DNA of 64,000 nucleotides from Hyphochytrium catenoides. Its lineage: Eukaryota > Protista > Hyphochytriomycota. Location of the stretch: positions 1 through 64,000 of the forward strand of contig FLMG01000727.1 of the NCBI GenBank assembly GCA_900088475.1, in the 5' to 3' direction. The first letter of the stretch is position 1, and each line of letters starts with the position of its first letter. The translations under genes and the position numbers were made by a program. Positions 17,101 to 33,275 of the stretch are shown here, piece after piece. Under the pieces are notes generated by a model. It had not been told where the DNA came from, made no database searches, and saw nothing but the letters and a program-made list of their open reading frames with translations.

Positions 17101-20100
17101 AAAGAGCCCCATGGACGGTCCGCCTTTGATCATGTTCGTCTGTCTCCATAGGTTCCTCTGCTTGCGCGAGGTTATGCCAGCGGCATGGGTCTAGGCTGCC
17201 AGGTCCAACCGGCTGGTCGAGAAATTTGAGAGCAAGGTCCCGGTGCCGTCCAAAGACAGGAGTCGCCGCCATAGCTCCATACACAAGTTCGAGCAGTGCC
17301 CTCACCTAGAGAAGGATTCAATTAGGTTAGAGTAGACGAAGGCAATCATGAAGGAACTGGACATGCATCCTAGAGTAGTAACTGGTTAAGTATGTCACCT
17401 TTGCCCGATTGAGTCCTTGCTGAGTACTAAGGTATGGGAGAGCGAATAGGAAGAGGTCGCTCGCCTCCTCCTTAGTGAGCCCATGCAGAGGTTCCGTCTT
17501 ATGGTCCGCAGGAGGCAGCGCTGACGTAACTTCGACGTGGTAAGAGCAATAGTAGCACTGTGCCAATTGCTCATTTTTCTGCTCCTGTCGAAGAACTTCT
17601 CCTTCGATCTCATCCGCGCGGACATTAGGTTGCTTTAACTGAGGAAGCAACACGCTGAGAAGGGTGAGTCCTGGCGCCNNNNNNNNNNNNNNTTTTCATG
17701 CAAGAGTGATACTTGCCCCCGATATGGTCGTGCAGGAGCTTCAGCGTCTGAAGTGTCTTATCCATGCCAAGATCTAAGTAAGAAAGGATTACCCCGAGTA
17801 GGATAGCACTCGGAAGTCTGATGCTCTGCGTGGATGCCAAATCTGTAGAGTCTGCTGCTTTGATAAAGCCTATCAGCTTGCCTACCAAGGAGGAGCGCTC
17901 TCCTTCCTGAAGCATTGGTATTTGATTCCCATTAGCCCTTGCGCGGCTCTGCTGTAGAAGTAAGGCCAGGTGCTTCGTTGCAGAAGTCAGAATTGGCATC
18001 CGCTGTGGCTGCGAATTCAATGCAACCACCTTCACAGGGAAGCAGAGGATTGTTCTCAAGAGATACTGATGCGCTTCACTCTTAAGTCTCAAGAGTAAGA
18101 GCAAACGCAGAACGTTACAGTAGCACTCATTGTGCCCCAGAACTGTAGCAATATAGCCACAGCGCCATAAAAGACTTCTCATGCGGCCACTTAGTAGGAG
18201 AGACGATAACTCCTTGACTTGACTCCGGTCGACAGTCAAGACCTTGGCAACAAAGCCCAAGATGTGCGAGAGTATAGCGGCTAGAGTTCCTGCTTGTCGG
18301 TACGAAGGGGGTAACTTCCTGAGTTGTTTAGAAAAGTAATCCTTCTTTTTTGCCAGGGCTTTGGATTTAGAGCCAATCTTTCCGCTAGCAGCCTCCCATT
18401 CTTCTTGGCATTCTCGCTAAAGAGAGAGTTACCCAAAGTGTTAGACGTCCATGACTGACGAATGTGTGAGCCGACTGGCCTGCAAACCTCAATAACTTCC
18501 TTTTCTGGCTCACTAGGATTTGACGAGGTCACTGAATCCTCAGCCCAATATTGATCATCGAACAGTTCGCGGATGATGTACGCTTCGGGTCTGCGTACAG
18601 TCACTTAGCTCTGCCTGCGACCCTATCACATGAGAAGCTTACCTGTCAATGTCGATGGCCGTGATTTCAAGCACATCGCAGAGAAACGATACTCCTGAGA
18701 CAGCTTCCGCGGCACGATAGAAGCAGTCGATAATGATATCTACAACGCTTCTCTGCTCTCCGCCTCCGGTATCCTGCCAAGCACCAAAACAAAGGTTTAG
18801 ACTAAACCTTCGGAGAATGAGATGTCAACCCTCATAAACCTTCATTGCCTTTCACTGGATCCATATCCTACTGGATAAATCGGGCCTTCCGCCCCTCCCC
18901 TACCTTCAATTTCGAGACTATCGCTTCCAGCACGTCTCGATAAAGAGTCAATCGGTTCGTTGAGGACAAAGTTTTCTTGATCTCACTCAGGATATCCTGA
19001 GCAACCTGCTTGGAGCTACTGTCATCACTTACAGTCTCCTTGCCTTCCAAGAGTCTATATTTTTCTCGGATCTTTTTGATCGAGAATGAGCGCAAAAGTT
19101 CGCTTATTTTGCTCTCGATCGTTGCAGGATGAATGACCGTGTCCTTGCTGCAGTTAGGAAGCCTAAGAGACATACTATCTACGTCATGAGATTCGCCAAT
19201 TGGTCTCTGTTGTTGTTCCTCATCCCCATTCATGCTGAGAACACGACAAGAGGATTTAGCAGCATCGCTACTGCTCTGCCCAACCTCACAAAGCTTTCCT
19301 TTACCGCTCTCTTTACAAGGGCTGATTGTCCTCGATGTTCGCTGGCAAGCCAAGAGTTTTGTTAGCTCGTCCTGGCATAGGCGTAGTGACTCCTCAGAAG
19401 AGGAGATCTCACGCAAGAGGATCTCCATGCGTGCTCGCAACCACCAGTAACGAACAATCAAAGGTGCATCAGTATCTGAACCTAGGTTGCCGCGGCTTAT
19501 TGCTCCGAGGAAACCTTGGAGGCCCGTGTCACAACGAGCAAGGGCACGCTGGTCCCAGGCGTTGGACTCATAGAGGTCAAAAGATAACTCCGCAATCATA
19601 AGCCAGACTTCTGGTTCCAGTGGCGTATCCAATCCTCGGCAGTCAAAGAGTTTCGAGATTATGATTGGTGAATCATCCGACAACTTCAGGCGTGTTATAA
19701 TGCGGGCGGTCCAAGCTAAGTACCTGGCTATCCAGGCCTGTGAGAGGGAACTGTTTCAGCAAGCCCAAATGCAAATTTGGGCCCATGACGTCCAATGTTC
19801 ACTTACTTTGAGTGAATAACCTTCCGTCTTGACAAACTTTAACGAAAGATTCTTCTCCTCTTTATAGTCTCTTCGGAAGAGAGACGGTTCTTTTGGGGCA
19901 ACGTTCTGCATGTTAGGAATGTGCTCAAATTGGGTGACATCCACCTCGTCCATTAGAGGCTGCCAGTCAAAATCTTCGCCAAACCTCTCATCAACCTGAA
20001 TGCCATCTAAGAGTGCGAACTGCAACTGATATCTAATGTCAGTTTCCTTTTTCAGTGCCAACTGGGCCTCATGATCAGCTTTCAGCTTCTCTTGCATTCT

Positions 20101-21873: not shown

Positions 21874-23207
21874 GATAGTAGAACTTTCTAGCCGATGTCA
21901 GAACTCTTTTTACCCTTCAGAACTAGGAAGTACTTGGGCTCTTCAAGTGAGAATCGTTGGCGTTAGCGGACTCTGACAGGTCTCAGGTCTCAAGAGCTTG
22001 TTTGCTGAGTGTCATCTGCGTTTGCTAGCATGTGAGACTGGGCCATCACAAGCGGCGGAAGATTCCCTTTTCAAGAGCTCTCTACTTGTACCCTTCCTTG
22101 GTGAAGCCTTGAGGCAACCCTAGGTTCTACGTCGCGGCTACACTTTTTTACCAGGTGGTTGTCTGCCTAACAGAGCCGCTGCCAGCGGAAGCGTGAGGGT
22201 TCGTCGTGAGTCCGCCGACGCCCCAACGTAGGATCGCCGATACTCCCTATCATTCAGCTCCAGGTGCAACTATATATTCTTGCGGAATGCAGCCTCAGCA
22301 GCATTCCCCTCTCTCCCCAACTCCACCTATCACACGCCCACCTGGCACCGTGATCATAGACTTTACTACTTGTTGATAACACTCGACGATGGTAGTTAAG
22401 GTTTACCTGACAACAACCGCAATCTTGCAAGGACCACGCTCATCCCACCAAGAGGGCGGTGATGACCAGCGACCCACAATGAGTCCACGCAACAAGTCTC
22501 CTACCACTACTGATCGGGATGGTAAGGAAGAAGCACTTTGGCACAACCCTTGAGAAAATCTTTCAGATATAGGCTCTTCTTGAGGTTGTCAAAGGGCGTG
22601 GCGATGTCTCAGGGCTTCTGCACATGGCGGATTTATACGAATCGTTGTTTCATTCTCTGGTTGAACACGTACCCTTCTTGTCCTTTGACCAGACGCTTTT
22701 GCTACTCCGCCCGGCTTGTGAGCTTATGAGCTTCCTGAATGCTTTCAAAGCAACCTCCAAGCCCTGAGAAGGGCTGGCTGGGATAGTGCGACAGCTCTGT
22801 TTTTGAGGAAGATGCATTTAGAGTCGAATGAGAACAAGTGCCAGCAGCAAGGGTGAAAAGGGTGACGCAGTTTGGATAGATGGTTAAGATCTATGAAGGG
22901 TGTACGCACTAACCTCAACCTGTAGACGAGTAAGCCAACTCAAAATTAGTGTTGATGCTCTTTGCTGTTACAATGGACTTATGTTACTATCTTTACGAAG
23001 CTTGATCTGCAAAGCGAATAAGCTTGGCATCTCATGCGACATAGGGCAAGATGAGTCTACATTATTGAGCATCCTTTCTATTATCTTCAATGAGCAGCCT
23101 GAGCTGCTAACTACCGGCGCCAGCTGCCAGCACGAGGACAGCAGTCACATGATTCTTCCGAGCGTAGAGTAGATCTTCGGAGTCCCGGACGGCACAGAAA
23201 TCGGATC

Positions 23208-26200
23208 CTATGAGGTACAAGCCCCTTTGCAGTCAAGATTCGACAAAGCGGTCTTTGTGATGCAGTCCACATGTCGTCGAAGCTCAACCTCATCTGGCGA
23301 ATCCCAAAAGCATCCGCGAGGGCCACAACGGCATGTCCCGCCGTACTCCTCAGGCAAAGCATCCGCGTCGATGTGCTGCAGAAGGACCTCCTTGATCTCT
23401 TTTCCCTTCAAGACAAAGGTCTGCCGACCAGTTCAAAAGAAGATGAGAGTCAGCTCCACTTTACTTGCGCAAGACAATAAGTCCTTTAAAGCTTGTACCT
23501 TATCCCGAGTCTTCTGGGAGACCATTGGTGCGCATAACTTCCAGATTATATTGAACCAGCTTGGAGGATTGACGATGAAGATCTAGGCAGCACAAGTCGG
23601 GTTAGATCACAGGGTCAGCGCAGCCATTGTACCCCTAATCGTACCTTTGCACCCCTTTCAGGGTAATTATCGCCGACCAATTGGCCTGCTTTTTTCATGA
23701 AGTTTAGGACCTCGCCCGCTAGGTCGCCCATACTGACTCCATCTATGTCAAGAATTCTTGAGTAGCAACCATGAGGTAAGGGCCGTGGGTCAATCTTTTG
23801 GATCTGGTACTCCATTAGGAAAACGGTGTGATAAAGAATTGCTTCCTCGCTTATGCCCTGGTCCGTAAGAACCTACGAAAAAGACCAATGAGGACGATAA
23901 ATACCAAGGAACCATAGAGAAGCTCACGTCGAGACATTAAGAAGCTTGACTTTGGGCCCAGTCAATAGCAAGATTGCATAGGTAACATAGGAGTCTAGTG
24001 ACCCACCTTAAGAAACTCCCTCATAGTTCCGGACTTATCAATGACCAAGTAGTTCCCATTCTTGTCTCTCTTGTGCACAGCATGGGGCCAGGCCTCCTTG
24101 ATCTACAAAGTAAGAGAAGGCAAAGGGAGGGGTCTGTGGACGGCAGGCGGGGTTTGAATCTGGCGGACGGACGTACCGCATAAAAGTGTGGTTGTGGCAT
24201 CTGTAAGACGTTGTCTATATTCCTGGCTTTCCTCCAGGCTAGAGTCTTCTGGTACCTTCTCTTTGCCTCTCTGATGCCTCCCTGATCACGGGTACCTTCA
24301 ATGAACCTGTGGATAGAGCTTCTCAGCTACCTGACAGGTCTTTAAAGAGGACAAAGTAGTATCTTACCTCTCGTCTACATCCTCGTCCCTCATTTCATCG
24401 CCATCAGCAGCTTCAACCACCCTCACTTTGACCAATTCAAGCTGCCAGTCTCTTTTCTTTCGCGGAGAGCGATATGAGTGGATGGCCATCACCAACTCTA
24501 GCAAGCACAGCGTCGGTATTAGCCGGATCAGAAGCAAGACCGAACAAAATCTAGTGAAGGATCGCTCACCCCGAATACTTCTAGACAAGTAGACCAGACC
24601 CGAGATCCATAGCACTATGAGCACAAAGAACTGCATGCCCGAGATAGAGAAGTAAAATGTAGATAATAGTAAAAGGAGAAATCCAGTGCTAAGCTCGGTC
24701 TTGAAATTTGACATTGAGGGCACGCCAGTGCTGACAAGCCTGCCGGCTAAAGCGTTGACGGTAATGACTAGCTTCAGCCCAGTGTACTCGCGCTACAAAG
24801 CAGGAGGTATAAGCGGGGGCGATCCCGACACGGACTTGACCAATGAAAAGGCCATGATAACATAGTAAGAGATAAGCAAGTCTACAGAGGAGACCTCAGA
24901 GGGTGAGCTTGGGGCTCATAAGGAAGAGGGTGGTAGGAGAGTAGGTGGTTGGAAGTCAGAATTGCTCGAAGAGACATTAGATGGGCGGTACGCTACCTTA
25001 TTCGCATAAACCCCGGCCTCCACAGCAAAGTCTTTGCCGTTCCGGTTCTCATCCAGAAGGTCATACTCTATTCGAGCTACCGCTGTCCCTCTAAAACTGG
25101 CGAGATATATACGAATTTCTGACGACCCTTCGAGCAGCTGGACGTGAAACTTCTCTCCTATAAACTCATGCAAGGAGGAAGCTACCACTCGCTCTAAAGG
25201 AGGATCCAGGGAGATATCTACTTCAGAGAGTGCCACCAGGGAGATGTCCTGATCCGTAGGACCCCAGATCAATTGGTTCATTGCAGCAATGTATTTGCTC
25301 CTTGTCTCCATTATTCGATCGAATAATTCGACAGCATCTTCCGCCGTAGGAGCCCGCAGCCGGTTCACCCTATCATGAATCGATGCATATGAATACCATC
25401 AATACCACCAAGAGATACAATGAAGCAGTGATCAAAGCGATTCGACCGAATAATAAGAGATTGCACAGCCTAACGGCATAGTCCGATAGACAAAATAAAC
25501 GGGGAGGAGATAGCTGACCTGCCGTCAAAACGAAATATGGTGATAACCCTTGGGAACTCCTTGTCTATCTCCACCTCCACCATGTCCATGAGGTTGAGAA
25601 TGAACTTATTCTCGCCCAGCTCAGACTTGGCGGATGGTTTGAAGAGGAAGAGATCCATATGTGTGAGGAAATAAACACGGTCTTTCCATAAAGCTACGTG
25701 AGGCAGCATCGTTAGAACGGGCTTAGAGAACTGTCATGGACTGAGTCTTCGGGGTGATATCTGCGACTCCTTTTGCATACACCTACAGCTAACAACTAGG
25801 AGACATTTCTGTCCTCACCCCTTTCATCTGGCATCCCTACTCTCTCTCAGTACAATGTCTATCTCTGGGGATTGTCCCACTACGACGCTATTACCTGTGT
25901 TCGCGTTCAGTGTGTGTGAGACCAAAGCTCTATTTGCGAGACCAAAAGTCCCAATATGAACAACAGAATCCGCAATCGTAGCCTGCCACTCGATCGAGCC
26001 TGTCGCAATGACGCCCTTCAGCGCTGTTGATTCTTCGCCAAGCTGGTGATGGTTCAATGGCTAGACGGAAGATAAGGTAGCGTTATGATCCTCTCATTAT
26101 AAAGAATCCACGCAAGTCTCACCGGCGACGTTGTCAAAAGAGACTTGACACAACTGTCACAAACGCGAACCTCAGTCTTGAAACCAAATTTCCTAATCGT

Positions 26201-26790
26201 CGAGAGCACTGTTGGCCTCTCAAGCAGCAATCCGGAGAGGAGCTTTGGCGATAAAGAAAGGTACTTACGGTAACATAATAAAGTTTGAGCCGTGTGATAG
26301 GCATATGGATGCTCCACAGTTGCGACAATGATGCTAGGAAAAGAGAAGTGAAAGCTCAGCGCCTCGGAGACCTGATAAAGCAATGGAGAAAAGCAAAATG
26401 AGTGGGACCTACACGAAGCCATAGCCTCTGAAGATGTGTGTTGCAGATTTTGCAGTAGTCACTATCGGACATTGGGGGCGGCTTCAAGAACTTTCCACTT
26501 GAAGGCCCAAGTGGTCCAGAGTTTTGAGGCGGTTCTGATTCACGGTCTGATTCACGCTCCGAGCTGCTGTCCTTTAGACGCTTCAGGTTCCGAAAGAAGC
26601 CGCGCATCTCTTCTTGTAAGTTGGGTGCCTCCATGAATCTCTTGGCCTTCTCGAAGCGTGTCTCGGAAAGGCGTGATGAATCCGAAGACCGTCGGCTCGT
26701 CGATCTTCTGAAAAGCGAGACACCCAGGCTGTGGCTTTGCCCTGAGGCCGGCATCCCGTCCAGGGCAGCTGCTGGTGCTTCTGCGGCCAT
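23208..26790 (-). CDS. FYVE + PH-like + transmembrane + CRAL-TRIO (Sec14) lipid-transfer protein; multi-exon
   Basis: FYVE: DYCKIC...R|HHCRNCGASICLSH...VRVCDSC. PH-like: WKDRVYFLTHMDLFLFK...LNLMDMVEV...RLRAPTAEDAVELFDRI. Hydrophobic segment: GFLLLLLSTFYFSISGMQFFVLIVLWISGLVYL. CRAL-TRIO: RRYQKTLAWRK..., HKRDKNG, ILDIDGVSM, NYPERGAK|IFIVNPPSWFNIIWKLCAPMVSQKTRDK, IDADALPEEYGGTCRC. Confidence 0.82.
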
Positions 26791-27796
26791 AGTCTTGGCG
26801 ACAAAAGTGTGGGTCACAGAAGAACCTTCAGCAGCTACAACGGCAATCTATGCTCTGACATGCGGGTGCGTTCTCCTTATTCTGCGCCTGATGAAGCTCT
26901 CTGCTCTCACCGGCAAGCAATCAACGCTCGGCTGACCAAGGGTCGCAGAAGTTATAAGTCTCCTTATAGAGATTCTTACGTGCACGATACAGTCACGGAT
27001 CACTGTGCCGCTGGCTGATAAGAAAGACAGTCTTCCACTTTACTCTCCACGCCGAACTCGTGACTCCCAACCCCCGCACGCTTCCCCCAAAAAGAACACG
27101 GTAACAGAGCAATAGCAAGACCCGAGAATAGTACCTAACTACTTATTTAGCACTTTCGGGAGAGGTAATACGTAGATTGGGGCAAAAGAAGCAGACAGGA
27201 GGAGCCTCCCTAAAACAAAGCACCGTTATCTTAGAGTTTTGCATGCAGCTGATTCCATATTTTCGTCTGTGTAGCTTAGCCTAGAGTAACCCTCCAGAAG
27301 TGGTGTGGCAGCTGAGCGGGCTGTGTTGAGTGATGTGAAAGGATTTGATGGATGATAAGAAAGGCTGCGGATGGCAGATGGCGCTTGGAAGCACAAGCCT
27401 CGAGAAGAAGAGGGCAAGCTTCTCACTCACTTAAGCCAGCTACGAGCCCAGCATGCGGAGAGAGGGATGGCAGAGGCTGTTCAGCTGTGAACTGTAGGTG
27501 ACAGGAAAGCCCCAGACCTCGTCCTGTGGGCATATAATAGTTCTTGCTGGGTCTTTAGGACATAACATCAAGAACCTGTCTCCCTTGCTGGACTGGAAAG
27601 CTCGCCACAGCCAGCGTCTGCGTGTCTAAGCTTCGCATGGCTAGTCTATAGCTTTCAGGCTATCCCTTCAGGCATTTCGTCTTCTGAGTTGAATCCTCAC
27701 CCCGACAAGGGCTTGCTACTGTGCATCACCCGAAGTGCACCCCTGAACCCTGCCCAAGTGCGCAAGAATCTGACGTCTTCTGTCCAAGAGGAGGAG

Positions 27797-30700
27797 ATGG
27801 CGCTTCCACCCTCACTTGATGTTGGAGTCTATAACCGTATAGTTGCTGCGGTCGAGGTGATGCAGTCCCCGCTAACTCTAGAAAATGAACGACGGGCAGC
27901 ATACGAGGTATATTACTCTAGTGCGAGTTCTTTTGCGGCAGAACCAGCTAAAGACCTCCCTACCCACAACAGGAATTTGAAGCGTTTAAGCGACGAGGCG
28001 ACAGCGCTCAGTACGCGCTCTGGATCTTGACGTCAGCAGGTTCTATATGGCACTATTGTGATTGTTGTTGACTGCACTCTGACTTCGTTCCGTTGCTGGG
28101 GAGTAGACAAACGTGATGCCATCCGCCACTTTGCCCTCCTGGTGTTAGAGGAGCAGCTTAATCAGCGTTGGCGGAACTCCTCTCAGGAACAACACACCTC
28201 CATGCGCCTACAGCTGTTGGAGCTATTCTCCCAAAGCAGCAAGCCTATGCTGGAGGAGAAGCAGTTTATCAAAGAGAAGCTGGTAAAGCTCATTAGTAAT
28301 GTAGCTGAAAGAGAATATCCACAGCACTGGCCTAGCTTTTTTCAAGACATGGGCCGCATATGGACGATGGGAGATACGCAGGCAGAGCTCGTGACTATGG
28401 TACTAAGAAAGTCCTAGTTACCCCCCTCAGTGCTTATTGCTTTTCCATCTCACTGCATGTTTGCTTTTGTCTAAGACGACTTTATTAACTCTAGCTAACT
28501 TTGGGTCTTAGGTTTTTCGGGACATCGCCCAAGACTGTATGTGCAACGAGTTTGCCGCAAATCTGCCGGCTGACCGTCGAAAGGATATTCTGAATGTAGG
28601 GTAGCGTCTGATGGTGCCACTTTGTTCTCCATGACTGACAAACTTCTTGCTCACATTGCACTTCGTTCATTCTTTCCGGTGGTGCTTATGAAGCGGGTTC
28701 TTGACTCTCAGACATCACCATCTAACTGCTCTTGGTCAATAACGTTAATCACATCCAGCTCAACTTCGTGTTTTCCCTCTCACTCTTGCGCAGGCGATGA
28801 ATACGTTTCTCCCGGAATTTCTACCAGGAGTGTATTCCTATTTGCAGTCCCAACACCAGATGTATACCTCAGTCCTCCACTCACCGACTCAGCGCAGCCG
28901 AGATGACTTTCAGAAAAGGTAAACGTGAACTTGGTCTCTCCTCATTCGGGTTCTGGCCGAGAGTGTCTGACACTCCCCCTATAGGTTGCTGTTGATCCGC
29001 GCGATTCTAAGAATGATAGCTGAGTTTGCTGAGTGGGCACCAATAAACCTTCTGTGCGGGTCGGAGATAAACTTTGTGAGGCTCTTCACTATTTTTCTTC
29101 CCGATCCGCATCTTCGTATGGGTAAGACGGACCCTACAGCCACTCCTTCTGCTTCTCTCTTGTTTATTCAGATTCGTGTCTTCCACCTTTCTCTTCACTA
29201 TGATCAAGACCTACTTTTTGTCCTCCTCCTCTGATCGATGCAATATGAGTGTATCCTTTCCTTTCTTTTGCTTCACTAAGACAGTCATGTACTCTTCAGA
29301 GGCTTGTGACTGTCTGCAACGAGTAGCTTCTCGCAGACTAAACACTCTAGACCATCATCCGGTGATTCAAGAGGCCATCCACTCTTTGCTTGTGGTTGCA
29401 CAGAAGGTTCCCCTGGAAGGCTATGAAGATCCAGAGACGCTAACTTTCCACCACAAATATTGTGAGATGTTAGCGCAATGGGGAGAGAAGCATCTAAGTC
29501 AACTTCGCTGCACATCCTCGTCTTCTAACTCTCGAGACGCCGAGTTAGTGTCTAGTTATCTTTCTCTGATGTGTCTCATTCTTCTCCATCCTAGCAGCAG
29601 AGTAGCTGACAGCCAGCTTTCTTTCTGGGCTTCAATCTCTAAAAATGAGGAGCTCTCTTCCTCTTCGGCTCTTGCTCCAATGGTCCCTATTGTGATGTCA
29701 AGGTTGTATGACAAACTGGCCAAGGTCAGGCTGGAAGAAGACTCGCCCTCATCTCTATGTGCTGCGGAAGAGTTCGATGATGTTTACGAGTATCAACAAT
29801 TTTTTGGAACGTTCAAGAGCCGCACAGGGCAGACGTTGAGAGTAATGTGCGCTAAGTGGCCAGTCATCGGCCTTGACCTGGCCCTCTACAAGCTTAAGGA
29901 GGTAATAGCTTCGCATCTGGAGCCTAAGGACGAAGTGACAGCCGAGGGCATAGCTACTCAGGGCTCCAAGGCCGTCCTCGCTCAAGATGCCCTCGCTTAT
30001 TACCTAGATAATCTCCTCCCAGCTGTGCTTGAGGGCAAGCTGGTGAAAGAAAATACCAATTCGTACAGTGCTATCCGGCAAAAGGTCGAGGAGCTTACGA
30101 CTGCCCTACTTGGCGTCAATATCGGTGATCCGGTCCTTCTTCAGCGCTACGTGCAAGCTTTGGCGTCCTTGGTGAAGTTCTACGAGCTAGAACCACGGTA
30201 CCTCACTCCTGCCTTCGAGAGGATCTTCCTATGTGTCTCTTTCGTCCATTCCGCAGATAGGCCGCAGGAAGAGAAAATCCATCAGGAGACGATTAGTTTG
30301 CGTCGGCGGGCTGCCGCCACTCTGGTGCGGTTGAGCAAGGCTGCACCCCAGCTTATGCTTCACTGTGTGCCAGATGTTGGAAATCGCATTCTGTCCCTCA
30401 TCCAGGACGGCGATAGAGTGAAACTTGCGGAAAATGAGAGAGTGACACTTTTGGAGATGCTTGTCGTTATTAGCAACTCATTCCCGCAGCAGGAACAGCA
30501 AGTTGCCTTTCTTGATGACATACTCAGGGACACCATTCAAGAATGGGCTGGAGAGAGCATGAGACAAAACGTCGCAGACCCACAACGCCTTGTCGCAGCT
30601 CTTGGCAATTTTCGGTTTTCTACTCTGGCGGTTGAGCCCTTAGAGTTTCGAGGCGGTGCCTTGTTAAGTCGGGTGCATCATATTGGGAGACGAGTGCAGC

Positions 30701-32887
30701 CTTCCGCACATACCGCTCATCACATCTTCAGACGGTAAGCTATTATGCTCAAAGCAGGCTAGGCCAGAAAAGCACCAGCCCGCTGGGTAGCGGCATAATA
30801 GCCAAGAAAAAGTAGGCAGGATGAGTGATGGTTGGATAAATGAGTGGTGACATGGAGAGAAGGAGTAGCAGGTACAAAGGATGATGCTTAGTAAACAAGA
30901 GTCGTGACGGTTTTATGATGAACAGTTGTGAGTGGCTCTGTTGTCTAATCTCTCCCCCTTCAGCTATTGGCCAACCATCTTGCCGAACGCACTATTGCTA
31001 ATCGGCACTCTTCACCAGCTCTGGAAACCAGATATCCGGCCCTCCCTCTTAGCCCTTGAAAGCGCACGGTGGTTGATGTTCCTGTCAGACGATGAGTTGG
31101 CTCCTCTGCTGGAAGGCAGAGAGCAGATCCAGTTGCCTGCAGAGGGGAAGGATCAACGGATTGGATGTGCACGCTGGATGAAGACGTTCAGACTTACTTG
31201 CTACGAAACTCTGGCGCTCGCAGGTAGAGCTCGTTTCGTATAAGCTTTGCTTGTCTTTCAATCGATATGACCATACGAAGGTTGCATAGCGAATGAACCT
31301 ACACGTTATCATCTGTTCGTGGCTTTTCNNCTTTTCATGGAACATCGCCATTTCAAGCAGTTCGTCCACTTTCTGGTGCGCCCGCTTACCTACAACTGCC
31401 CGGATGAGCATCGCATGGCTGTGCTTAAGCCCTTGTTGACTGTTACCTTTAGTCACGCTGCATTAAGACTTGAGTCAGTCTGGTGCGCAAAGATGGTATG
31501 ACACCGCTATCTATTACTTCTGCCTCCCCCTTAATGGCGCTTGACAATCTAGATGCCTTCTGACCTGCACGGAGATTGAGTTCGTTGTCATGTGCCTTTT
31601 ATCTCTCAGAATCCCTCTTGTTTGCAACTATAAGTTACACTCTCTCTGTCGATGCAGCCTGGCGCTGTGATCACTGACGAAAGGCGGGCGGAGCAGCTGC
31701 ATTGGCAATCCATTATCCCCGGCTTAGACCCTGCTCTGGGTGAGGTGGTCCAAGAGGGGATTGTGAGAGATCTTTCCCGGATCATCATGGACTTTCTTCA
31801 CAGCATTCTCGCATTTTTCGTCCCAGAGGGAGACGACAAGGCCGAAACCTCATCGAAGAATTTTCTTCATCTGGAAGCTGTCCGTCACTTCGTTTTGTTT
31901 TCCCAGGAGGAGCTGTCTGGATCCCTCATGATGTTGCTTCTTACCTCATTACGTATTCCAGACACCTACTGCTGTCGTAAGGCGGTTTCAATATGTTCGG
32001 CAATTCTTAGTACTCTTTCCAGCTCTGGGCCTTCGACTCCTCAGTCCAGCAATGTTGGGTTGGGCCAAATTTCATCTTCGCCAGAAGCAGGGAAGCAGAC
32101 GGTAGGGATAGAATGGCTGACGAAGTACCAGTTGGTCTTCGCCCGGGATGTTCTAAGCACCGCGGTGCGACTCTTGCTGGCAGGTGAGGCATAGAGAGTG
32201 AGTCAAGCTTCTTAAGAGTGGAGGTGTGGTTCATTCTATCGAATGGAAAGCTAACTGTCGCTCTTTCCTTACCCTCTTCCAATATGTTCTTGTGTCTTCC
32301 TCTATGTACCTCTCTTTCCTAAGGTTCTTTGGCACACTATCTTTCCTATTCTCTTAATGGCTGCTACTACTTCTGTTCTTCCTAACAATGACTATGACGA
32401 CCCTAATGACGCAGACGACCTTCCTCATGTCGAGGACTCAAGCTTACAATGGCAGATTGTCACTCTAGTGAAGTCCATCTACTGCCGTTTCAGTCTGGGT
32501 CTGCTGGAAGAAAAAGAGAAAAAAGATGTCAACTCCTCCACACCCAGTTCCCTTCCGCTGAAAAAGGAAGTGGACCCTAGTCGCATCCTATTCCTCTCTC
32601 TGCCTGGAGTGACCGAGGAGGTTTTAGACAAACTGGATAGGCAGCTAAAGGAAGAACATACAGAAAGGGCCCGAAGACTGCTTGTCAAAGATTTTCTTCA
32701 AGATGCCGCAAGTAGGCTTAGGCAAGAGGAGAAGGCGGGAGGTGAGTCCATTTTGAAGAAGAAGAGCTACAAGGTGGACAGCCTTCCACCTTACCTTCGC
32801 TCGAAGAAGGGAACACCTCCATCATCGTCTTCTATATGGCAAGCAGGAGACGTATCCGTAGGGTCCCTCTTTGACACTGCCCACTAG
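27797..32887 (+). CDS. XPO5: Exportin-5 (HASTY/Msn5 family); multi-exon
   Basis: RIVAAVEVMQSP...ERRAAYE|EFEAFK, IRHFALLVLEEQLNQRW, EKQFIKEKLVKLISNVAEREYPQHWP, RRKDILN, EEFDDVYEYQQFF, LRRRAAATLVRLSK, ERVTLLEMLVVISN, MEHRHFKQFVH. These are importin-beta N, Xpo1 and exportin-5 family features. Confidence 0.88.
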
Positions 32888-33275
32888 ATCTCCACCCTAG
32901 CCCCCCCTAGGCCTTCTCTCCTTTCTACTTCTGTTGCTGTCTGTCGGCTTTGGCCCTCTCTATCTCCTTCCAGTCCGCAAGCTGGTCCTTCTAGGCTGCA
33001 CCTTTCTGTCACGATCCATCAACTGAATCTCTAGCTTTGAATACTTTATTTATATAGAGCAGTAATCAATCCTCCACGTTCCCTTCATGACACTTTTTCC
33101 CTTCAAGGATTCTTCTAGACTATCTTTGACTTTAGCCTCGAGTGAAAGGACATCGATCATGTCTCCAGTCCCTGAGCTCTTTCCTGAGATCCTGGAGTTG
33201 TACACCTATCTCCGTTTAGGGTATCGGTACATCGATAGGCCTAAGGGCTCATTGGGTTTTTAGCCCTTTTGCATC

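What the first reader, a model, noticed from the sequence alone, without database searches (positions are those of the whole stretch)
23208..26790. FYVE-PH-TM-Sec14 fusion: candidate single-chain lipid-transfer tether for membrane contact sites
Seen: one colinear spliced gene carries a FYVE finger (RHHCRNCG, RVC), a PH-like domain, a ~33-residue hydrophobic hairpin-like segment and a full C-terminal CRAL-TRIO domain. The FYVE lacks the WxxD Trp (PPMSDSD) and has His at one Zn-ligand position (CLSH). Known: FYVE binds endosomal PI3P, Sec14 domains exchange PI/PC or other lipids, and ER-anchored tethers such as protrudin and MOSPD2 use similar parts in other combinations. Inference: an ER-anchored protein that grips endosomes through FYVE/PH and shuttles lipid through Sec14. 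I do not know this architecture from model organisms.
Basis: partly seen in the sequence, partly recalled or inferred. Interest (0 to 1): 0.7.

Follow-up and report, generated by a model that had tools for sequence, protein, structure and literature searches.

The report
Membrane-anchored FYVE-PH-C2-like-Sec14 protein gene
This stramenopile gene does encode one protein joining three membrane-lipid-reading modules, a short membrane hairpin and a Sec14 lipid-carrying domain; the layout is conserved across oomycetes, including Phytophthora, and I found no study of it.

Summary
A 12-exon minus-strand gene (26790..23208, 808 codons, all introns GT..AG) encodes, in order:
- a variant FYVE finger
- a PH domain
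- a 38-residue hydrophobic hairpin, plus one extra hydrophobic helix
- an acidic linker
- a complete Sec14/CRAL-TRIO domain

Ten of the 12 exons match, in order, a profile of about 60 full-length relatives from the sampled oomycete lineages.

The single-chain doubt is settled by relatives. A metagenomic member is one intronless 900-codon ORF. In Phytophthora infestans one 765-codon exon runs from the FYVE core to the stop. Three window introns sit at exactly the positions of oomycete introns, and a fourth lies within one nucleotide.

The FYVE oddities are family traits: His as sixth zinc ligand and no Trp of WxxD. The Sec14 domain is nearest yeast Sec14p. It has lost all five PtdCho-barcode residues and keeps half of the PtdIns barcode.

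The tether and lipid-shuttle function is plausible but untested. A same-membrane (cis) role and an odd-pass topology in this copy remain open.

The family carries only automatic database names. I found no paper on it. No RNA run was listed. The joined protein was never assembled.

The parts
23208..26790 (-). Whole coding region: 12 exons, 808 codons, ATG at 26790, TAG at 23210-23208
   Evidence: frames, GT..AG introns. (colinear match to the oomycete family).
26413..26790 (-). Exon 1. Ser/Arg-rich N-terminal region without a hydrophobic stretch or Pfam match, presumed disordered. It ends with the first zinc pair CKIC and a hydrophobic LWL loop before the basic motif.
   Evidence: No hydrophobic stretch. 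Aligns to family profile positions 8-98, ending at the CxxC. The E1/E2 intron lies at the same position and phase as the single P. infestans intron.
26139..26475 (-). Variant FYVE finger spanning the end of E1, E2 and E3: CKIC .. RHHCRNCG .. CLSH .. RVCDSC. Seven Cys plus one His. No Trp of WxxD.
   Evidence: Pfam FYVE on E2 (20.0 bits) and E3 (15.7 bits). Homologues score 36-51 bits. CxxH is 90% or more conserved in 27 relatives.
25273..26024 (-). PH domain (E4, E5 and the first ~32 residues of E6, which form the C-terminal helix)
   Evidence: Pfam PH on E5, E=0.05. PH hit in 9 of 27 relatives, best 4.4e-5. AF2 model of P0016: seven strands plus a long helix, 165-295.
24754..25272 (-). C2-like beta-sandwich. 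It covers the rest of E6 and the first ~13 residues of E7, so it spans intron 6.
   Evidence: Alignment A3. AF2 of the P0016 domain, pLDDT 86. Structure hits are almost all C2 domains, best Z 6.7. Atlas PI3K_C2 TM 0.60.
24793..24996 (-).
   Evidence: The splice joins ..AVEAGVYANK to REYTGLKLVITVN. By my own residue-by-residue reading, this lines up without indels with the family consensus VVEAEPLxxxPxDxxxLxV. E7 itself was not in that alignment, and no tool aligned this stretch significantly. Read through unspliced, the frame stops at 24916.
24583..24696 (-). Hydrophobic hairpin, E7 residues 33-70: two uncharged helices of ~15-18 residues around the turn SISG
   Evidence: Relatives have two 15-21-residue helices joined by a 1-9-residue turn, 37-47 residues in all. 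AF2 places helices at 408-424 and 430-448 in P0016.
24475..24558 (-). Extra hydrophobic helix, E7 residues 79-106, with Arg90, Pro93 and Glu99 in its core. It has no such hydrophobic counterpart in the 27 aligned relatives.
   Evidence: mean hydropathy 1.7-2.2, low hydrophobic moment.
24370..24423 (-). Acidic linker before the Sec14 domain
   Evidence: Relatives have an equivalent acidic stretch that is disordered in AF2.
24177..24306 (-). Exon 8: N-terminal helical part of the Sec14 fold (CRAL_TRIO_N region)
   Evidence: Family profile positions 560-599, E=3e-12. The equivalent P0016 stretch aligns to yeast Sec14p from residue 56.
23337..24102 (-). CRAL-TRIO lipid-binding domain (E9-E12)
   Evidence: Pfam CRAL_TRIO on E10, E11 and E12. 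Relatives score 1e-27 to 1e-31. The P0016 model matches yeast Sec14p 1aua at E=3e-14.
23310..23342 (-). Conserved C-terminal motif GGTCRCGPRGC (family consensus YGGxCxCEGGC)
   Evidence: Invariant G, G, C, C, G, C columns in 27 relatives.

Best explanation
This is an intact single gene for a membrane-anchored Sec14-type lipid-exchange protein. It belongs to a family shared with oomycetes.

Shown here:
- The order of parts is FYVE, PH, C2-like sandwich, hairpin of two short hydrophobic helices, acidic linker, Sec14 domain, all in one chain.
- The layout is conserved.

Inferred:
- The hairpin inserts into one membrane, most likely the ER, with both flanks in the cytosol.
- The N-terminal reader arm (FYVE with an intact RHHCR/RVC pocket and a hydrophobic LWL loop, then PH, then C2-like) binds anionic or 3-phosphoinositide-rich membrane. 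That could be an apposed organelle such as an endosome or vacuole.
- The Sec14 domain, on a short acidic leash, extracts and exchanges a lipid at that site. Phosphatidylinositol or a derivative is the likeliest cargo, because T236, K239 and E207 equivalents are kept. The second ligand is not phosphatidylcholine, because all five PtdCho-barcode positions are replaced.

In short, it would be a Sec14-based counterpart of anchored contact-site lipid-transfer proteins.
For: One gene:
- Colinear exon-by-exon match to the family.
- The C2-like domain spans intron 6, so splitting the gene there would cut a domain in half.
- A. stellatus has one ORF holding the PH helix, C2-like domain, hairpin and CRAL_TRIO_N.
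- P. infestans exon 2 is 765 codons, from HRCRNCG to the stop.
- The metagenomic member P0014 is one 900-codon ORF.
- Intron positions are shared with oomycetes.

Family: about 60 full-length members. FYVE is found in 25 of 27 and CRAL_TRIO in 27 of 27.

Hairpin:
- Two 15-21-residue helices are joined by a 1-9-residue turn.
- Summed over the relatives, both flanks carry more basic residues than the turn: K+R 43 (N flank) and 37 (C flank) against 16.
- Only the C flank is clearly net positive. Acidic residues number 36, 12 and 11 for N flank, C flank and turn.
- AF2 places helices at 408-424 and 430-448.

Sec14:
- Nearest solved relatives are yeast Sec14p, Sfh1 and Sfh5.
- The barcode residue list comes from PMC4945147.
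- I mapped the barcode through the alignment printed.

The C2-like fold is supported. Anchored proteins with peripheral lipid readers are an established class that includes protrudin and MOSPD2 (PMC9692390).
Against: - No RNA evidence: none was listed for this stretch.
- No experiment exists on any family member.
- The FYVE lacks the WxxD Trp, and only one of the two leading basic residues is kept, so PI3P specificity is not assured.
- R65 of the PtdIns barcode is not kept.
- The C2-like match is modest (Z below 8).
- The linkers are short, and the C2-like domain abuts the anchor. In P0016 the last strand ends 6 residues before the first hairpin helix.
- This copy has a third hydrophobic helix (E7 79-106). 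If it spans the bilayer, the Sec14 domain would lie on the opposite face.
- The anchoring membrane is unknown.
Confidence: 0.45

Rival explanations
1. Cis-acting device. The protein lives in one membrane, for example an endosomal or vacuolar one. FYVE, PH and C2-like all read that same membrane. The anchored Sec14 domain does not shuttle lipid between organelles. Instead it lifts phosphatidylinositol out of the bilayer and presents it to a lipid kinase, boosting local phosphoinositide synthesis, as proposed for yeast Sec14p and the plant Sec14-nodulins.
For: - The Sec14 domain is closest to yeast Sec14p/Sfh1, whose accepted role is stimulating PtdIns kinases through an exchange cycle (PMC10543664; PMC4945147).
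- The C2-like domain lies within a few residues of the hairpin, and PH follows directly through one long helix.
- The window's FYVE-PH linker is only about 16 residues.
Against: The two-ligand priming model needs a second ligand, and here the PtdCho barcode is fully replaced. R65 of the PtdIns barcode is lost. Most anchored lipid-transfer proteins described so far work at contacts (PMC9692390).
Confidence: 0.3
2. In this particular copy the third hydrophobic helix (E7 79-106) is a true transmembrane pass. The reader arm and the Sec14 domain would then face opposite sides of the membrane, and the protein would work differently from its oomycete relatives.
For: E7 79-106 is as hydrophobic as the hairpin helices (mean 1.7-2.2), is not amphipathic (low moment) and is long enough to span a bilayer.
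Against: - It carries Arg90, Pro93 and Glu99 in its core.
- None of the 27 aligned relatives has a comparably long hydrophobic third helix at that place. Only P0193 shows an 11-residue third segment there.
- Sec14 domains and FYVE fingers are cytosolic modules (established knowledge).
- The segment between hairpin and helix is strongly basic, like the cytosolic C flank of relatives.
Confidence: 0.2
3. Two neighbouring genes (FYVE-PH and TM-Sec14) wrongly merged, or a pseudogene.
For: No transcript data were available. Read unspliced, the E6 frame ends at a stop at 24916, and an ATG lies in E7.
Against: - The conserved beta-sandwich needs residues from both E6 and E7.
- The junction is inside a single ORF in three relatives.
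- Every exon is open, has canonical splice sites, and gives in-register joins to the family profile.
Confidence: 0.03
4. The FYVE-like finger is a structural or protein-binding zinc module rather than a phosphoinositide reader. Targeting would then rest on PH, C2-like or partner proteins.
For: No Trp of WxxD in the window, in any of the six sequences shown, or in the 27-member consensus. His replaces one Cys ligand. Aphanomyces euteiches members have KYVCK in place of RHHCR.
Against: RHHCR, RVC and a hydrophobic loop before the basic motif are kept in the window and most relatives. Pfam FYVE scores of relatives are well above threshold.
Confidence: 0.25

Closest known systems
Oomycete FYVE/CRAL-TRIO proteins known only from automatic annotation. 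Examples: Globisporangium ultimum UniRef100_K3WIM6 and Aphanomyces stellatus UniRef100_A0A485LRE0, plus unnumbered entries from Plasmopara ('putative FYVE zinc finger, CRAL-TRIO lipid binding domain') and Phytophthora infestans ('CRAL/TRIO domain').
   Same: - Same order of all parts.
- Same FYVE peculiarities (CxxH, no WxxD Trp).
- Same C2-like domain, hairpin of the same total length, acidic linker, Sec14 domain and C-terminal GGxCxC..GC motif.
- Shared intron positions.
   Different: - Only about 40% identical in the Sec14 core.
- The window gene has 11 introns against 1-4.
- It has a shorter FYVE-PH linker.
- It has an extra hydrophobic helix after the hairpin.
Protrudin (ZFYVE27)
   Same: A membrane-inserted ER protein with hydrophobic hairpin-type segments. 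Its FYVE finger binds several phosphoinositides rather than PI3P alone. It makes ER-late endosome contacts (PMC9692390).
   Different: Protrudin has no lipid-transfer domain of its own, no PH and no C2-like domain. Its FYVE is C-terminal to the membrane segments. No sequence relationship was found outside the FYVE.
MOSPD2
   Same: A CRAL-TRIO domain on a membrane-anchored ER protein that acts at contacts (PMC9692390).
   Different: MOSPD2 has a single C-terminal anchor and an MSP domain and lacks FYVE, PH and C2. The window protein's beta-sandwich matched C2 domains, and MSP domains were absent from the top 50. I did not align it to an MSP structure.
Extended synaptotagmins / tricalbins
   Same: The same logic: a hairpin anchor, one lipid-transfer domain and C2-type membrane readers (PMC9692390; the ER hairpin is from my own knowledge).
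   Different: The transfer domain is SMP, not Sec14. The order is reversed (anchor first). The C2 domains are canonical and calcium-regulated.
Yeast Sec14p/Sfh1 and plant Sec14-nodulin proteins (AtSfh1)
   Same: The nearest solved relatives of the lipid-binding domain. Plant members also fuse the Sec14 domain to a membrane-targeting module (PMC4945147).
   Different: Those proteins are soluble or peripheral and keep both lipid barcodes. Here the PtdCho barcode is fully replaced and the PtdIns barcode is half kept.
Multidomain Sec14-like proteins of Toxoplasma gondii
   Same: Sec14 domains combined with PH and transmembrane segments in a protist (figure legend quoted in PMC10543664).
   Different: No FYVE is listed there. 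At least three of them are about 2,000 residues long, and all are uncharacterised. No relationship beyond the Sec14 domain was tested.

Membership tests
FYVE zinc finger (PF01363) | Four pairs of zinc ligands | tested here: met
   The pairs are CKIC, CRNC, CLSH and CDSC. The sixth ligand is His rather than Cys. Cys and His at these positions are 90% or more conserved in 27 relatives.
FYVE zinc finger (PF01363) | Basic R(R/K)HHCR motif | tested here: inconclusive
   The window has LRHHCR, so the RHHCR core is kept and the first basic residue is Leu. Relatives read RxRHxCR. A. euteiches has KYVCK.
FYVE zinc finger (PF01363) | WxxD motif before the first Cys | tested here: not met
   The window has PPMSDSDYC with no Trp. 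No Trp in the six sequences or in the 27-member consensus.
FYVE zinc finger (PF01363) | RVC motif and a Pfam score above threshold | tested here: met
   VRVCDSC is present. The exon pieces score 20.0 and 15.7 bits separately against a threshold of 27.8. The whole finger could not be scored because the exons were not joined. Relatives score 36-51 bits.
PH domain (PF00169) | Seven-strand sandwich capped by a C-terminal helix, with a Pfam match | tested here: met
   E5 E=0.05. 9 of 27 relatives match, best 4.4e-5. AF2 of P0016 gives strands at 165-265 and a helix at 269-295. The window exons align to this region at 3e-9 and 3e-12.
PH domain (PF00169) | Basic phosphoinositide-binding motif in the beta1-beta2 loop | tested here: inconclusive
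   The one loop Arg invariant in 27 relatives (R195 of P0016) is His in the window (SHT against family SRN). The window keeps only the Arg of GRS (NRA), which is 90% or more conserved. The loop is long and poorly modelled.
C2 domain | Eight-strand beta-sandwich of C2 topology | tested here: inconclusive
   The domain model has pLDDT 86. Most of the 50 best solved matches are C2 domains, but the best Z is only 6.7. Foldseek gave nothing at E<=0.001. Atlas PI3K_C2 TM 0.60. No Pfam C2 hit in 27 relatives.
C2 domain | Loop aspartates that bind calcium | not tested
   The only invariant acidic residues are one Asp and one Glu near the first two strands. No structure-based mapping was done.
Sec14 / CRAL-TRIO (PF00650) | CRAL-TRIO lipid-binding fold with the N-terminal helical part | tested here: met
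   Pfam on E10, E11 and E12. E8 and E9 align to the family's N-terminal part. P0016 aligns to Sec14p residues 56-271 and matches its structure at E=3e-14.
Sec14p-type PtdIns/PtdCho exchange proteins | PtdIns barcode R65, K66, T236, K239 | tested here: inconclusive
   The list comes from PMC4945147. I mapped it by hand through. T236 and K239 are kept (window KTRDK), and so is E207. R65 is Thr in the window and Ala or Cys in relatives. K66 may be Arg, after a 2-residue insertion.
Sec14p-type PtdIns/PtdCho exchange proteins | PtdCho barcode Y111, Y122, Y151, S173, T175 | tested here: not met
   The window equivalents are V, V, T, Y, R. P0016 has I, L, T, M, R (hand mapping through).
Anchored contact-site lipid-transfer proteins (E-Syt, ORP5/8, MOSPD2 type) | A membrane anchor with both flanks cytosolic | tested here: inconclusive
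   The hairpin length and the flank and turn charges of relatives fit, with a clearly basic C flank and a roughly neutral N flank. The window's extra hydrophobic helix leaves an odd-pass topology possible.
Anchored contact-site lipid-transfer proteins (E-Syt, ORP5/8, MOSPD2 type) | Localisation at an organelle contact and lipid transfer between membranes | not testable with these tools
   This needs microscopy and in vitro transfer assays.

The most novel reading that the evidence does not exclude
Oomycetes and their stramenopile relatives possess a so-far undescribed class of contact-site machine. It would be a hairpin-anchored Sec14 domain steered by a FYVE-PH-C2-like reader arm, moving or presenting phosphatidylinositol between the ER and PI3P-bearing organelles. 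It would be the first Sec14-based anchored tether with its own phosphoinositide readers. Because it is conserved in the sampled oomycetes and not seen in the plant or animal lineages I sampled, it would be a lineage-specific handle on membrane traffic in Phytophthora and Saprolegnia.
Probability: 0.35. Interest if true: 0.7.

Novelty: new variant of a known kind. Interest (0 to 1): 0.5.

Why it matters
Anchored lipid-transfer proteins at organelle contacts are a central topic in cell biology. The known ones use SMP, ORD, StART or VASt domains. The one known anchored CRAL-TRIO protein, MOSPD2, has no phosphoinositide readers of its own.

A conserved chain that combines FYVE, PH, a C2-like domain, a hairpin and a Sec14p-type domain would add a new design. 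It would also give a direct test of whether Sec14 domains act as carriers or as lipid presenters when they cannot leave the membrane.

The family occurs in the sampled oomycete lineages, which include major crop and fish pathogens. I did not find the full layout outside stramenopile-like sequences in the searches run. Oomycetes also have an unusually expanded FYVE repertoire whose roles are mostly unknown (for the expansion; for the count of 272 in P. sojae).

For this window the result is more modest. It adds an intron-rich, deep-branching member that shows the architecture predates the oomycete radiation.

Tried and rejected
- RNA evidence: the look-up of sequencing runs listed no run for 23100-26900.
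- Word search with exon 6 alone: nothing found. The length window of that tool excludes full-length kin, so this blank means little.
- phmmer of exon 10 against the PDB: no hit at 0.01. The longer P0016 Sec14 part did hit Sec14p.
- ESM Atlas by features with P0014: no usable hit.
- Foldseek of the mid-domain against the PDB: nothing at E<=0.001. VIA-align and the Atlas shape search gave the C2 lead.
- Alignment A4 (P0014 plus the 12 exon peptides): MAFFT misplaced the fragments, so I did not use it for a search. The third word search was left unspent.
- An MSP (VAP-like) domain was considered for the beta-sandwich. I dropped it because the structural neighbours are C2 domains.
- Literature: no paper in the held library combines FYVE with Sec14/CRAL-TRIO in oomycetes. 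Two surveys of oomycete FYVE proteins do not name this combination in their text, and no supplement was held.
- The two-gene reading was rejected (see rivals).
I do not rely on it.
- The joined 808-residue protein was never assembled, searched or folded. All work on the window was done exon by exon, by reference.
Full report
**1. What is in the sequence**

Reading the minus strand of 23100-26900, I built a 12-exon model and checked it by script. The exons are E1 26790-26413, E2 26333-26269, E3 26216-26123, E4 26060-25895, E5 25693-25519, E6 25369-24997, E7 24792-24368, E8 24306-24177, E9 24102-24007, E10 23872-23645, E11 23582-23499 and E12 23420-23208. This gives 2427 nt, or 808 codons plus TAG. 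All eleven introns begin GT and end AG, and they are 52-204 nt long.

Every search on the window used single exons by reference.

Pfam results by exon:
- FYVE on E2 (profile positions 25-43) and E3 (45-65).
- A weak PH hit on E5.
- CRAL_TRIO on E10 (32-95), E11 (99-126) and E12 (129-153).
- Nothing on E1, E6 or E7.

The zinc pairs are CKIC, CRNC, CLSH and CDSC. The basic motif reads LRHHCR, RVC is present, and PPMSDSDYC stands where WxxD would be.

Only E7 is hydrophobic. It has a 38-residue stretch at residues 33-70 and a second stretch at residues 79-106.

**2. Relatives**

No sequencing run was listed for the stretch, so the test had to be comparative.

The word search cannot see full-length kin of an exon-sized query, and it was blank for E6. 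The claim turns on whether this architecture exists elsewhere, so I spent the exhaustive search on the CRAL-TRIO core exon E10. It returned 139 representatives. Many are 690-960 residues long with the match near the C-terminus.

Four representatives carry the whole layout:
- P0006, Globisporangium splendens. Its cluster also holds G. ultimum K3WIM6.
- P0016, Aphanomyces stellatus.
- P0020, A. euteiches.
- P0014, from a metagenome.

Each has FYVE near the N-terminus, hydrophobic segments 100-200 residues before the CRAL_TRIO domain, and CRAL_TRIO at the end.

A word search with their alignment found about 60 full-length members. The genera are Phytophthora, Peronospora, Hyaloperonospora, Plasmopara, Peronosclerospora, Pythium, Globisporangium, Lagenidium, Albugo, Saprolegnia, Achlya, Thraustotheca and Aphanomyces. 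All carry automatic names only.

Scanning 27 members individually gave CRAL_TRIO in 27, FYVE in 25 and PH in 9.

**3. The window gene is a colinear member**

BLASTP of each exon peptide against six members, and hmmsearch with a 27-member profile, place the exons in strict order with abutting coordinates:

| Exon | Profile positions | E-value |
|---|---|---|
| E2 | 102-120 | 9e-6 |
| E3 | 124-142 | 1e-4 |
| E4 | 208-253 | 3e-9 |
| E5 | 256-319 | 3e-12 |
| E6 | 322-430 | 5e-10 |
| E8 | 560-599 | 3e-12 |
| E9 | 601-630 | 3e-7 |
| E10 | 634-705 | 5e-25 |
| E11 | 709-736 | 1e-15 |
| E12 | 739-794 | 2e-17 |

E1 aligns to positions 8-98 and ends at the first CxxC. E7 has no significant sequence match. 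It does fill the gap of 129 profile positions with 141 residues, and it carries the same succession of features as the relatives.

**4. One chain, not two genes**

Four observations settle it.

- The conserved domain between PH and the hairpin needs residues from both E6 and E7. By my own residue-by-residue reading, the splice yields ..AVEAGVYANK/REYTGLKLVITVN, which lines up without indels with the family consensus VVEAEPLxxxPxDxxxLxV. E7 was not in that alignment, and hmmsearch did not align its N-terminus significantly.
- In A. stellatus DNA, a single uninterrupted ORF (L001 3780-4784) holds the PH C-terminal helix, that domain, the hydrophobic region, the acidic linker and the start of the Sec14 domain.
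- In P. infestans, the second exon is 765 codons long and runs from HRCRNCG of the FYVE finger to the stop.
- The metagenomic member P0014 is one intronless ORF of 900 codons that translates exactly to the full protein.

Intron positions also tie the window gene to these relatives:
- The E1/E2 intron (..LR|HHCRNCG) is at the same place and phase as the only P. infestans intron.
- The E11/E12 intron (KTRDK|T) is at the same place and phase as an A. stellatus intron.
- The E8/E9 intron matches another A. stellatus intron.
- The E5/E6 intron lies at the same residue as a third A. stellatus intron, one nucleotide off.

The gene is flanked upstream by a divergent exportin-5 gene about 900 bp away. 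A 200-bp gap between two co-oriented genes would therefore be out of character for this locus.

**5. Anatomy of the family**

An AlphaFold2 model of P0016 built on 27 sequences has mean pLDDT 67, with the domains higher. It shows:
- FYVE at 80-141.
- A PH fold at 165-295, with a long beta1-beta2 insertion and a 27-residue C-terminal helix.
- A beta domain at 303-401.
- Helices at 408-424 and 430-448, and a shorter helix at 451-462.
- A strand at 472-483.
- A disordered acidic linker.
- The Sec14 fold at 505-754.

Foldseek of this model puts yeast Sec14p first (1aua, E=3e-14, TM 0.62 by target).

I then folded the beta domain alone, from an alignment that included the window's E6 part (pLDDT 86, pTM 0.78). 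Foldseek found nothing significant. The exhaustive structural aligner returned a list made up almost wholly of C2 domains: PKC-delta Z 6.7, copine BON1 6.6, Itch, intersectin-2, NEDD4, PI3K, PLC-beta and E-Syt2. The Atlas shape search put PI3K_C2 first at TM 0.60, then a C2-bearing PS decarboxylase cluster, with B9-C2 fourth.

Z values below 8 are common background for that tool. I therefore call the domain C2-like, not C2. No member has a Pfam C2 hit.

**6. The FYVE finger**

In the 27-member alignment, the Cys of CxxC, CRNC and RVCDxC are conserved at 90% or more or are invariant. So are the Cys and His of VCxxH(S).

No Trp precedes the first Cys in the window, in the six sequences shown, or in the 27-member consensus. 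The RHHCR core, RVC and a hydrophobic loop (LWL in the window, LGLL or LRLL in relatives) are kept.

Established knowledge holds that WxxD, R(R/K)HHCR and RVC together form the PI3P pocket. Two of the three are present here. Phosphoinositide binding is likely, but PI3P specificity is not assured. Protrudin's FYVE, listed as binding PIP2 and PIP3 in PMC9692390, is a precedent for relaxed specificity.

**7. The Sec14 domain**

P0016 residues 495-745 hit yeast Sec14p (8e-17), Sfh1, and a chain labelled SFH5 (7y10) that the fold search titles Arabidopsis AtSFH5.

The barcode residues come from PMC4945147. The PtdIns barcode is R65, K66, T236 and K239. The PtdCho barcode is Y111, Y122, Y151, S173 and T175. 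I mapped them by hand through the alignment printed and the exon correspondences.

| Barcode | Position | Window | P0016 or family |
|---|---|---|---|
| PtdIns | T236 | kept (KTRDK) | kept |
| PtdIns | K239 | kept | kept |
| (also) | E207 | kept | kept |
| PtdIns | R65 | Thr | Ala or Cys |
| PtdIns | K66 | possibly Arg, after a 2-residue insertion | Ser |
| PtdCho | Y111 | V | I |
| PtdCho | Y122 | V | L |
| PtdCho | Y151 | T | T |
| PtdCho | S173 | Y | M |
| PtdCho | T175 | R | R |

Sec14p-style PtdCho binding is therefore excluded. PtdIns binding is possible but not assured. The C-terminal YGGxCxC..GGC motif is invariant.

**8. The anchor and topology**

Across relatives, the hydrophobic region is two helices of 15-21 residues joined by a turn of 1-9 residues, 37-47 residues in all. 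Summed over the relatives, K+R counts are 43 (N flank), 16 (turn) and 37 (C flank). Acidic counts are 36, 11 and 12. Only the C flank is clearly net positive. The N flank and the turn are near neutral. This fits a hairpin with both ends in the cytosol, though the charge argument rests mainly on the C flank.

The window's E7 residues 33-70 are 38 residues long, with the uncharged turn SISG, followed by RSIRGERSFTR. This fits the family pattern well.

The window also has a further hydrophobic helix at E7 79-106. It has Arg90, Pro93 and Glu99 in its core and no amphipathic character. None of the 27 relatives has a comparably long one. I rate that at about one in five. Sequence alone cannot decide it.

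**9. How it most likely works**

Shown: one chain with three peripheral lipid-reader folds, a hairpin anchor and a Sec14p-type domain, conserved across oomycetes and in this stramenopile.

Inferred: the anchor sits in the ER or another membrane with everything else cytosolic. The Sec14 domain, on a short acidic leash, exchanges a PtdIns-like lipid there.

Two versions remain open:
- **Trans (contact-site tether), about 0.45.** Anchored lipid-transfer proteins generally work this way.
- **Cis (local lipid presenter), about 0.3.** Three points favour it. The C2-like domain abuts the hairpin (6 residues in P0016). PH follows rigidly through one helix. The window's FYVE-PH linker is only about 16 residues.

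**10. Comparison and novelty**

In people, CRAL-TRIO and FYVE each occur in just one anchored protein, MOSPD2 and protrudin respectively, and never together (PMC9692390).

Two surveys of oomycete FYVE proteins report a large expansion with many lineage-specific partner domains. They do not name this combination in their text. Searches combining FYVE with Sec14/CRAL and oomycete terms found nothing relevant.

The architecture is therefore catalogued by automatic annotation but, as far as I could find, undescribed and untested. The window adds an intron-rich member at about 40% identity. Earlier notes of this scan describe the genome as an oomycete-like stramenopile, which agrees with the best hits here.

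Beyond the full architecture, a hairpin-plus-Sec14 core with other or no N-terminal domains occurs in the green alga Micractinium, in Aphanomyces paralogues and in the rhizarian Guttulinopsis. A diatom (Proboscia) protein instead carries two Sec14 domains and one hydrophobic segment, with no hairpin before them.

**11. Limits**

- There is no transcript evidence for this organism.
- The joined protein was not scored or folded.
- Barcode mapping was done by hand.
- The C2 assignment rests on modest structural scores.
- All functional statements are inference.

Noticed in passing
P0043 (Phytophthora nicotianae KUF99207.1, 698 aa): One gene model combines a PI3Ka accessory domain, a PI3/PI4-kinase catalytic domain, a hydrophobic stretch (386-440) and a CRAL_TRIO domain. 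It is either a real kinase-Sec14 fusion, which would fit the lipid-presentation idea, or two merged neighbours.
   Followed up: no
P0067, P0076, P0082 (about 1000-1130 aa): These representatives have many hydrophobic segments on both sides of a central Sec14 domain. They resemble the MFS-Sec14 layout that an earlier finding (s1-338236) reported elsewhere in this genome.
   Followed up: partly
L001:6147-7419 and proteins P0160, P0184, P0196: In Saprolegniales the FYVE-Sec14 gene lies directly upstream of CNOT11. Several deposited gene models merge the two (Pfam CNOT11 + FYVE + CRAL_TRIO in one product).
   Followed up: no
L003:2-2437: The metagenomic intronless member P0014 has a divergently oriented glycerol-3-phosphate acyltransferase (Acyltransferase + GPAT_C) as its immediate neighbour.
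   Followed up: no
window 27689-32900 (+): The upstream divergent neighbour is a multi-exon exportin-5 gene, with IBN_N, Xpo1 and Exportin-5 hits on successive ORFs.
   Followed up: partly
window about 17625-18260 and 31085-31456: ORF translations contain runs of X, meaning unresolved bases (assembly gaps) in the window.
   Followed up: no
P0002 / P0213 (Proboscia alata transcriptome, 1270-1288 aa): A diatom protein carries two Sec14 domains in tandem, matched at 589-842 and 1032-1284.
   Followed up: no
L001:4248-4289: The deposited A. stellatus model removes a 42-nt in-frame 'intron' inside an otherwise continuous ORF, just before the hairpin. It may be an annotation artefact.
   Followed up: no
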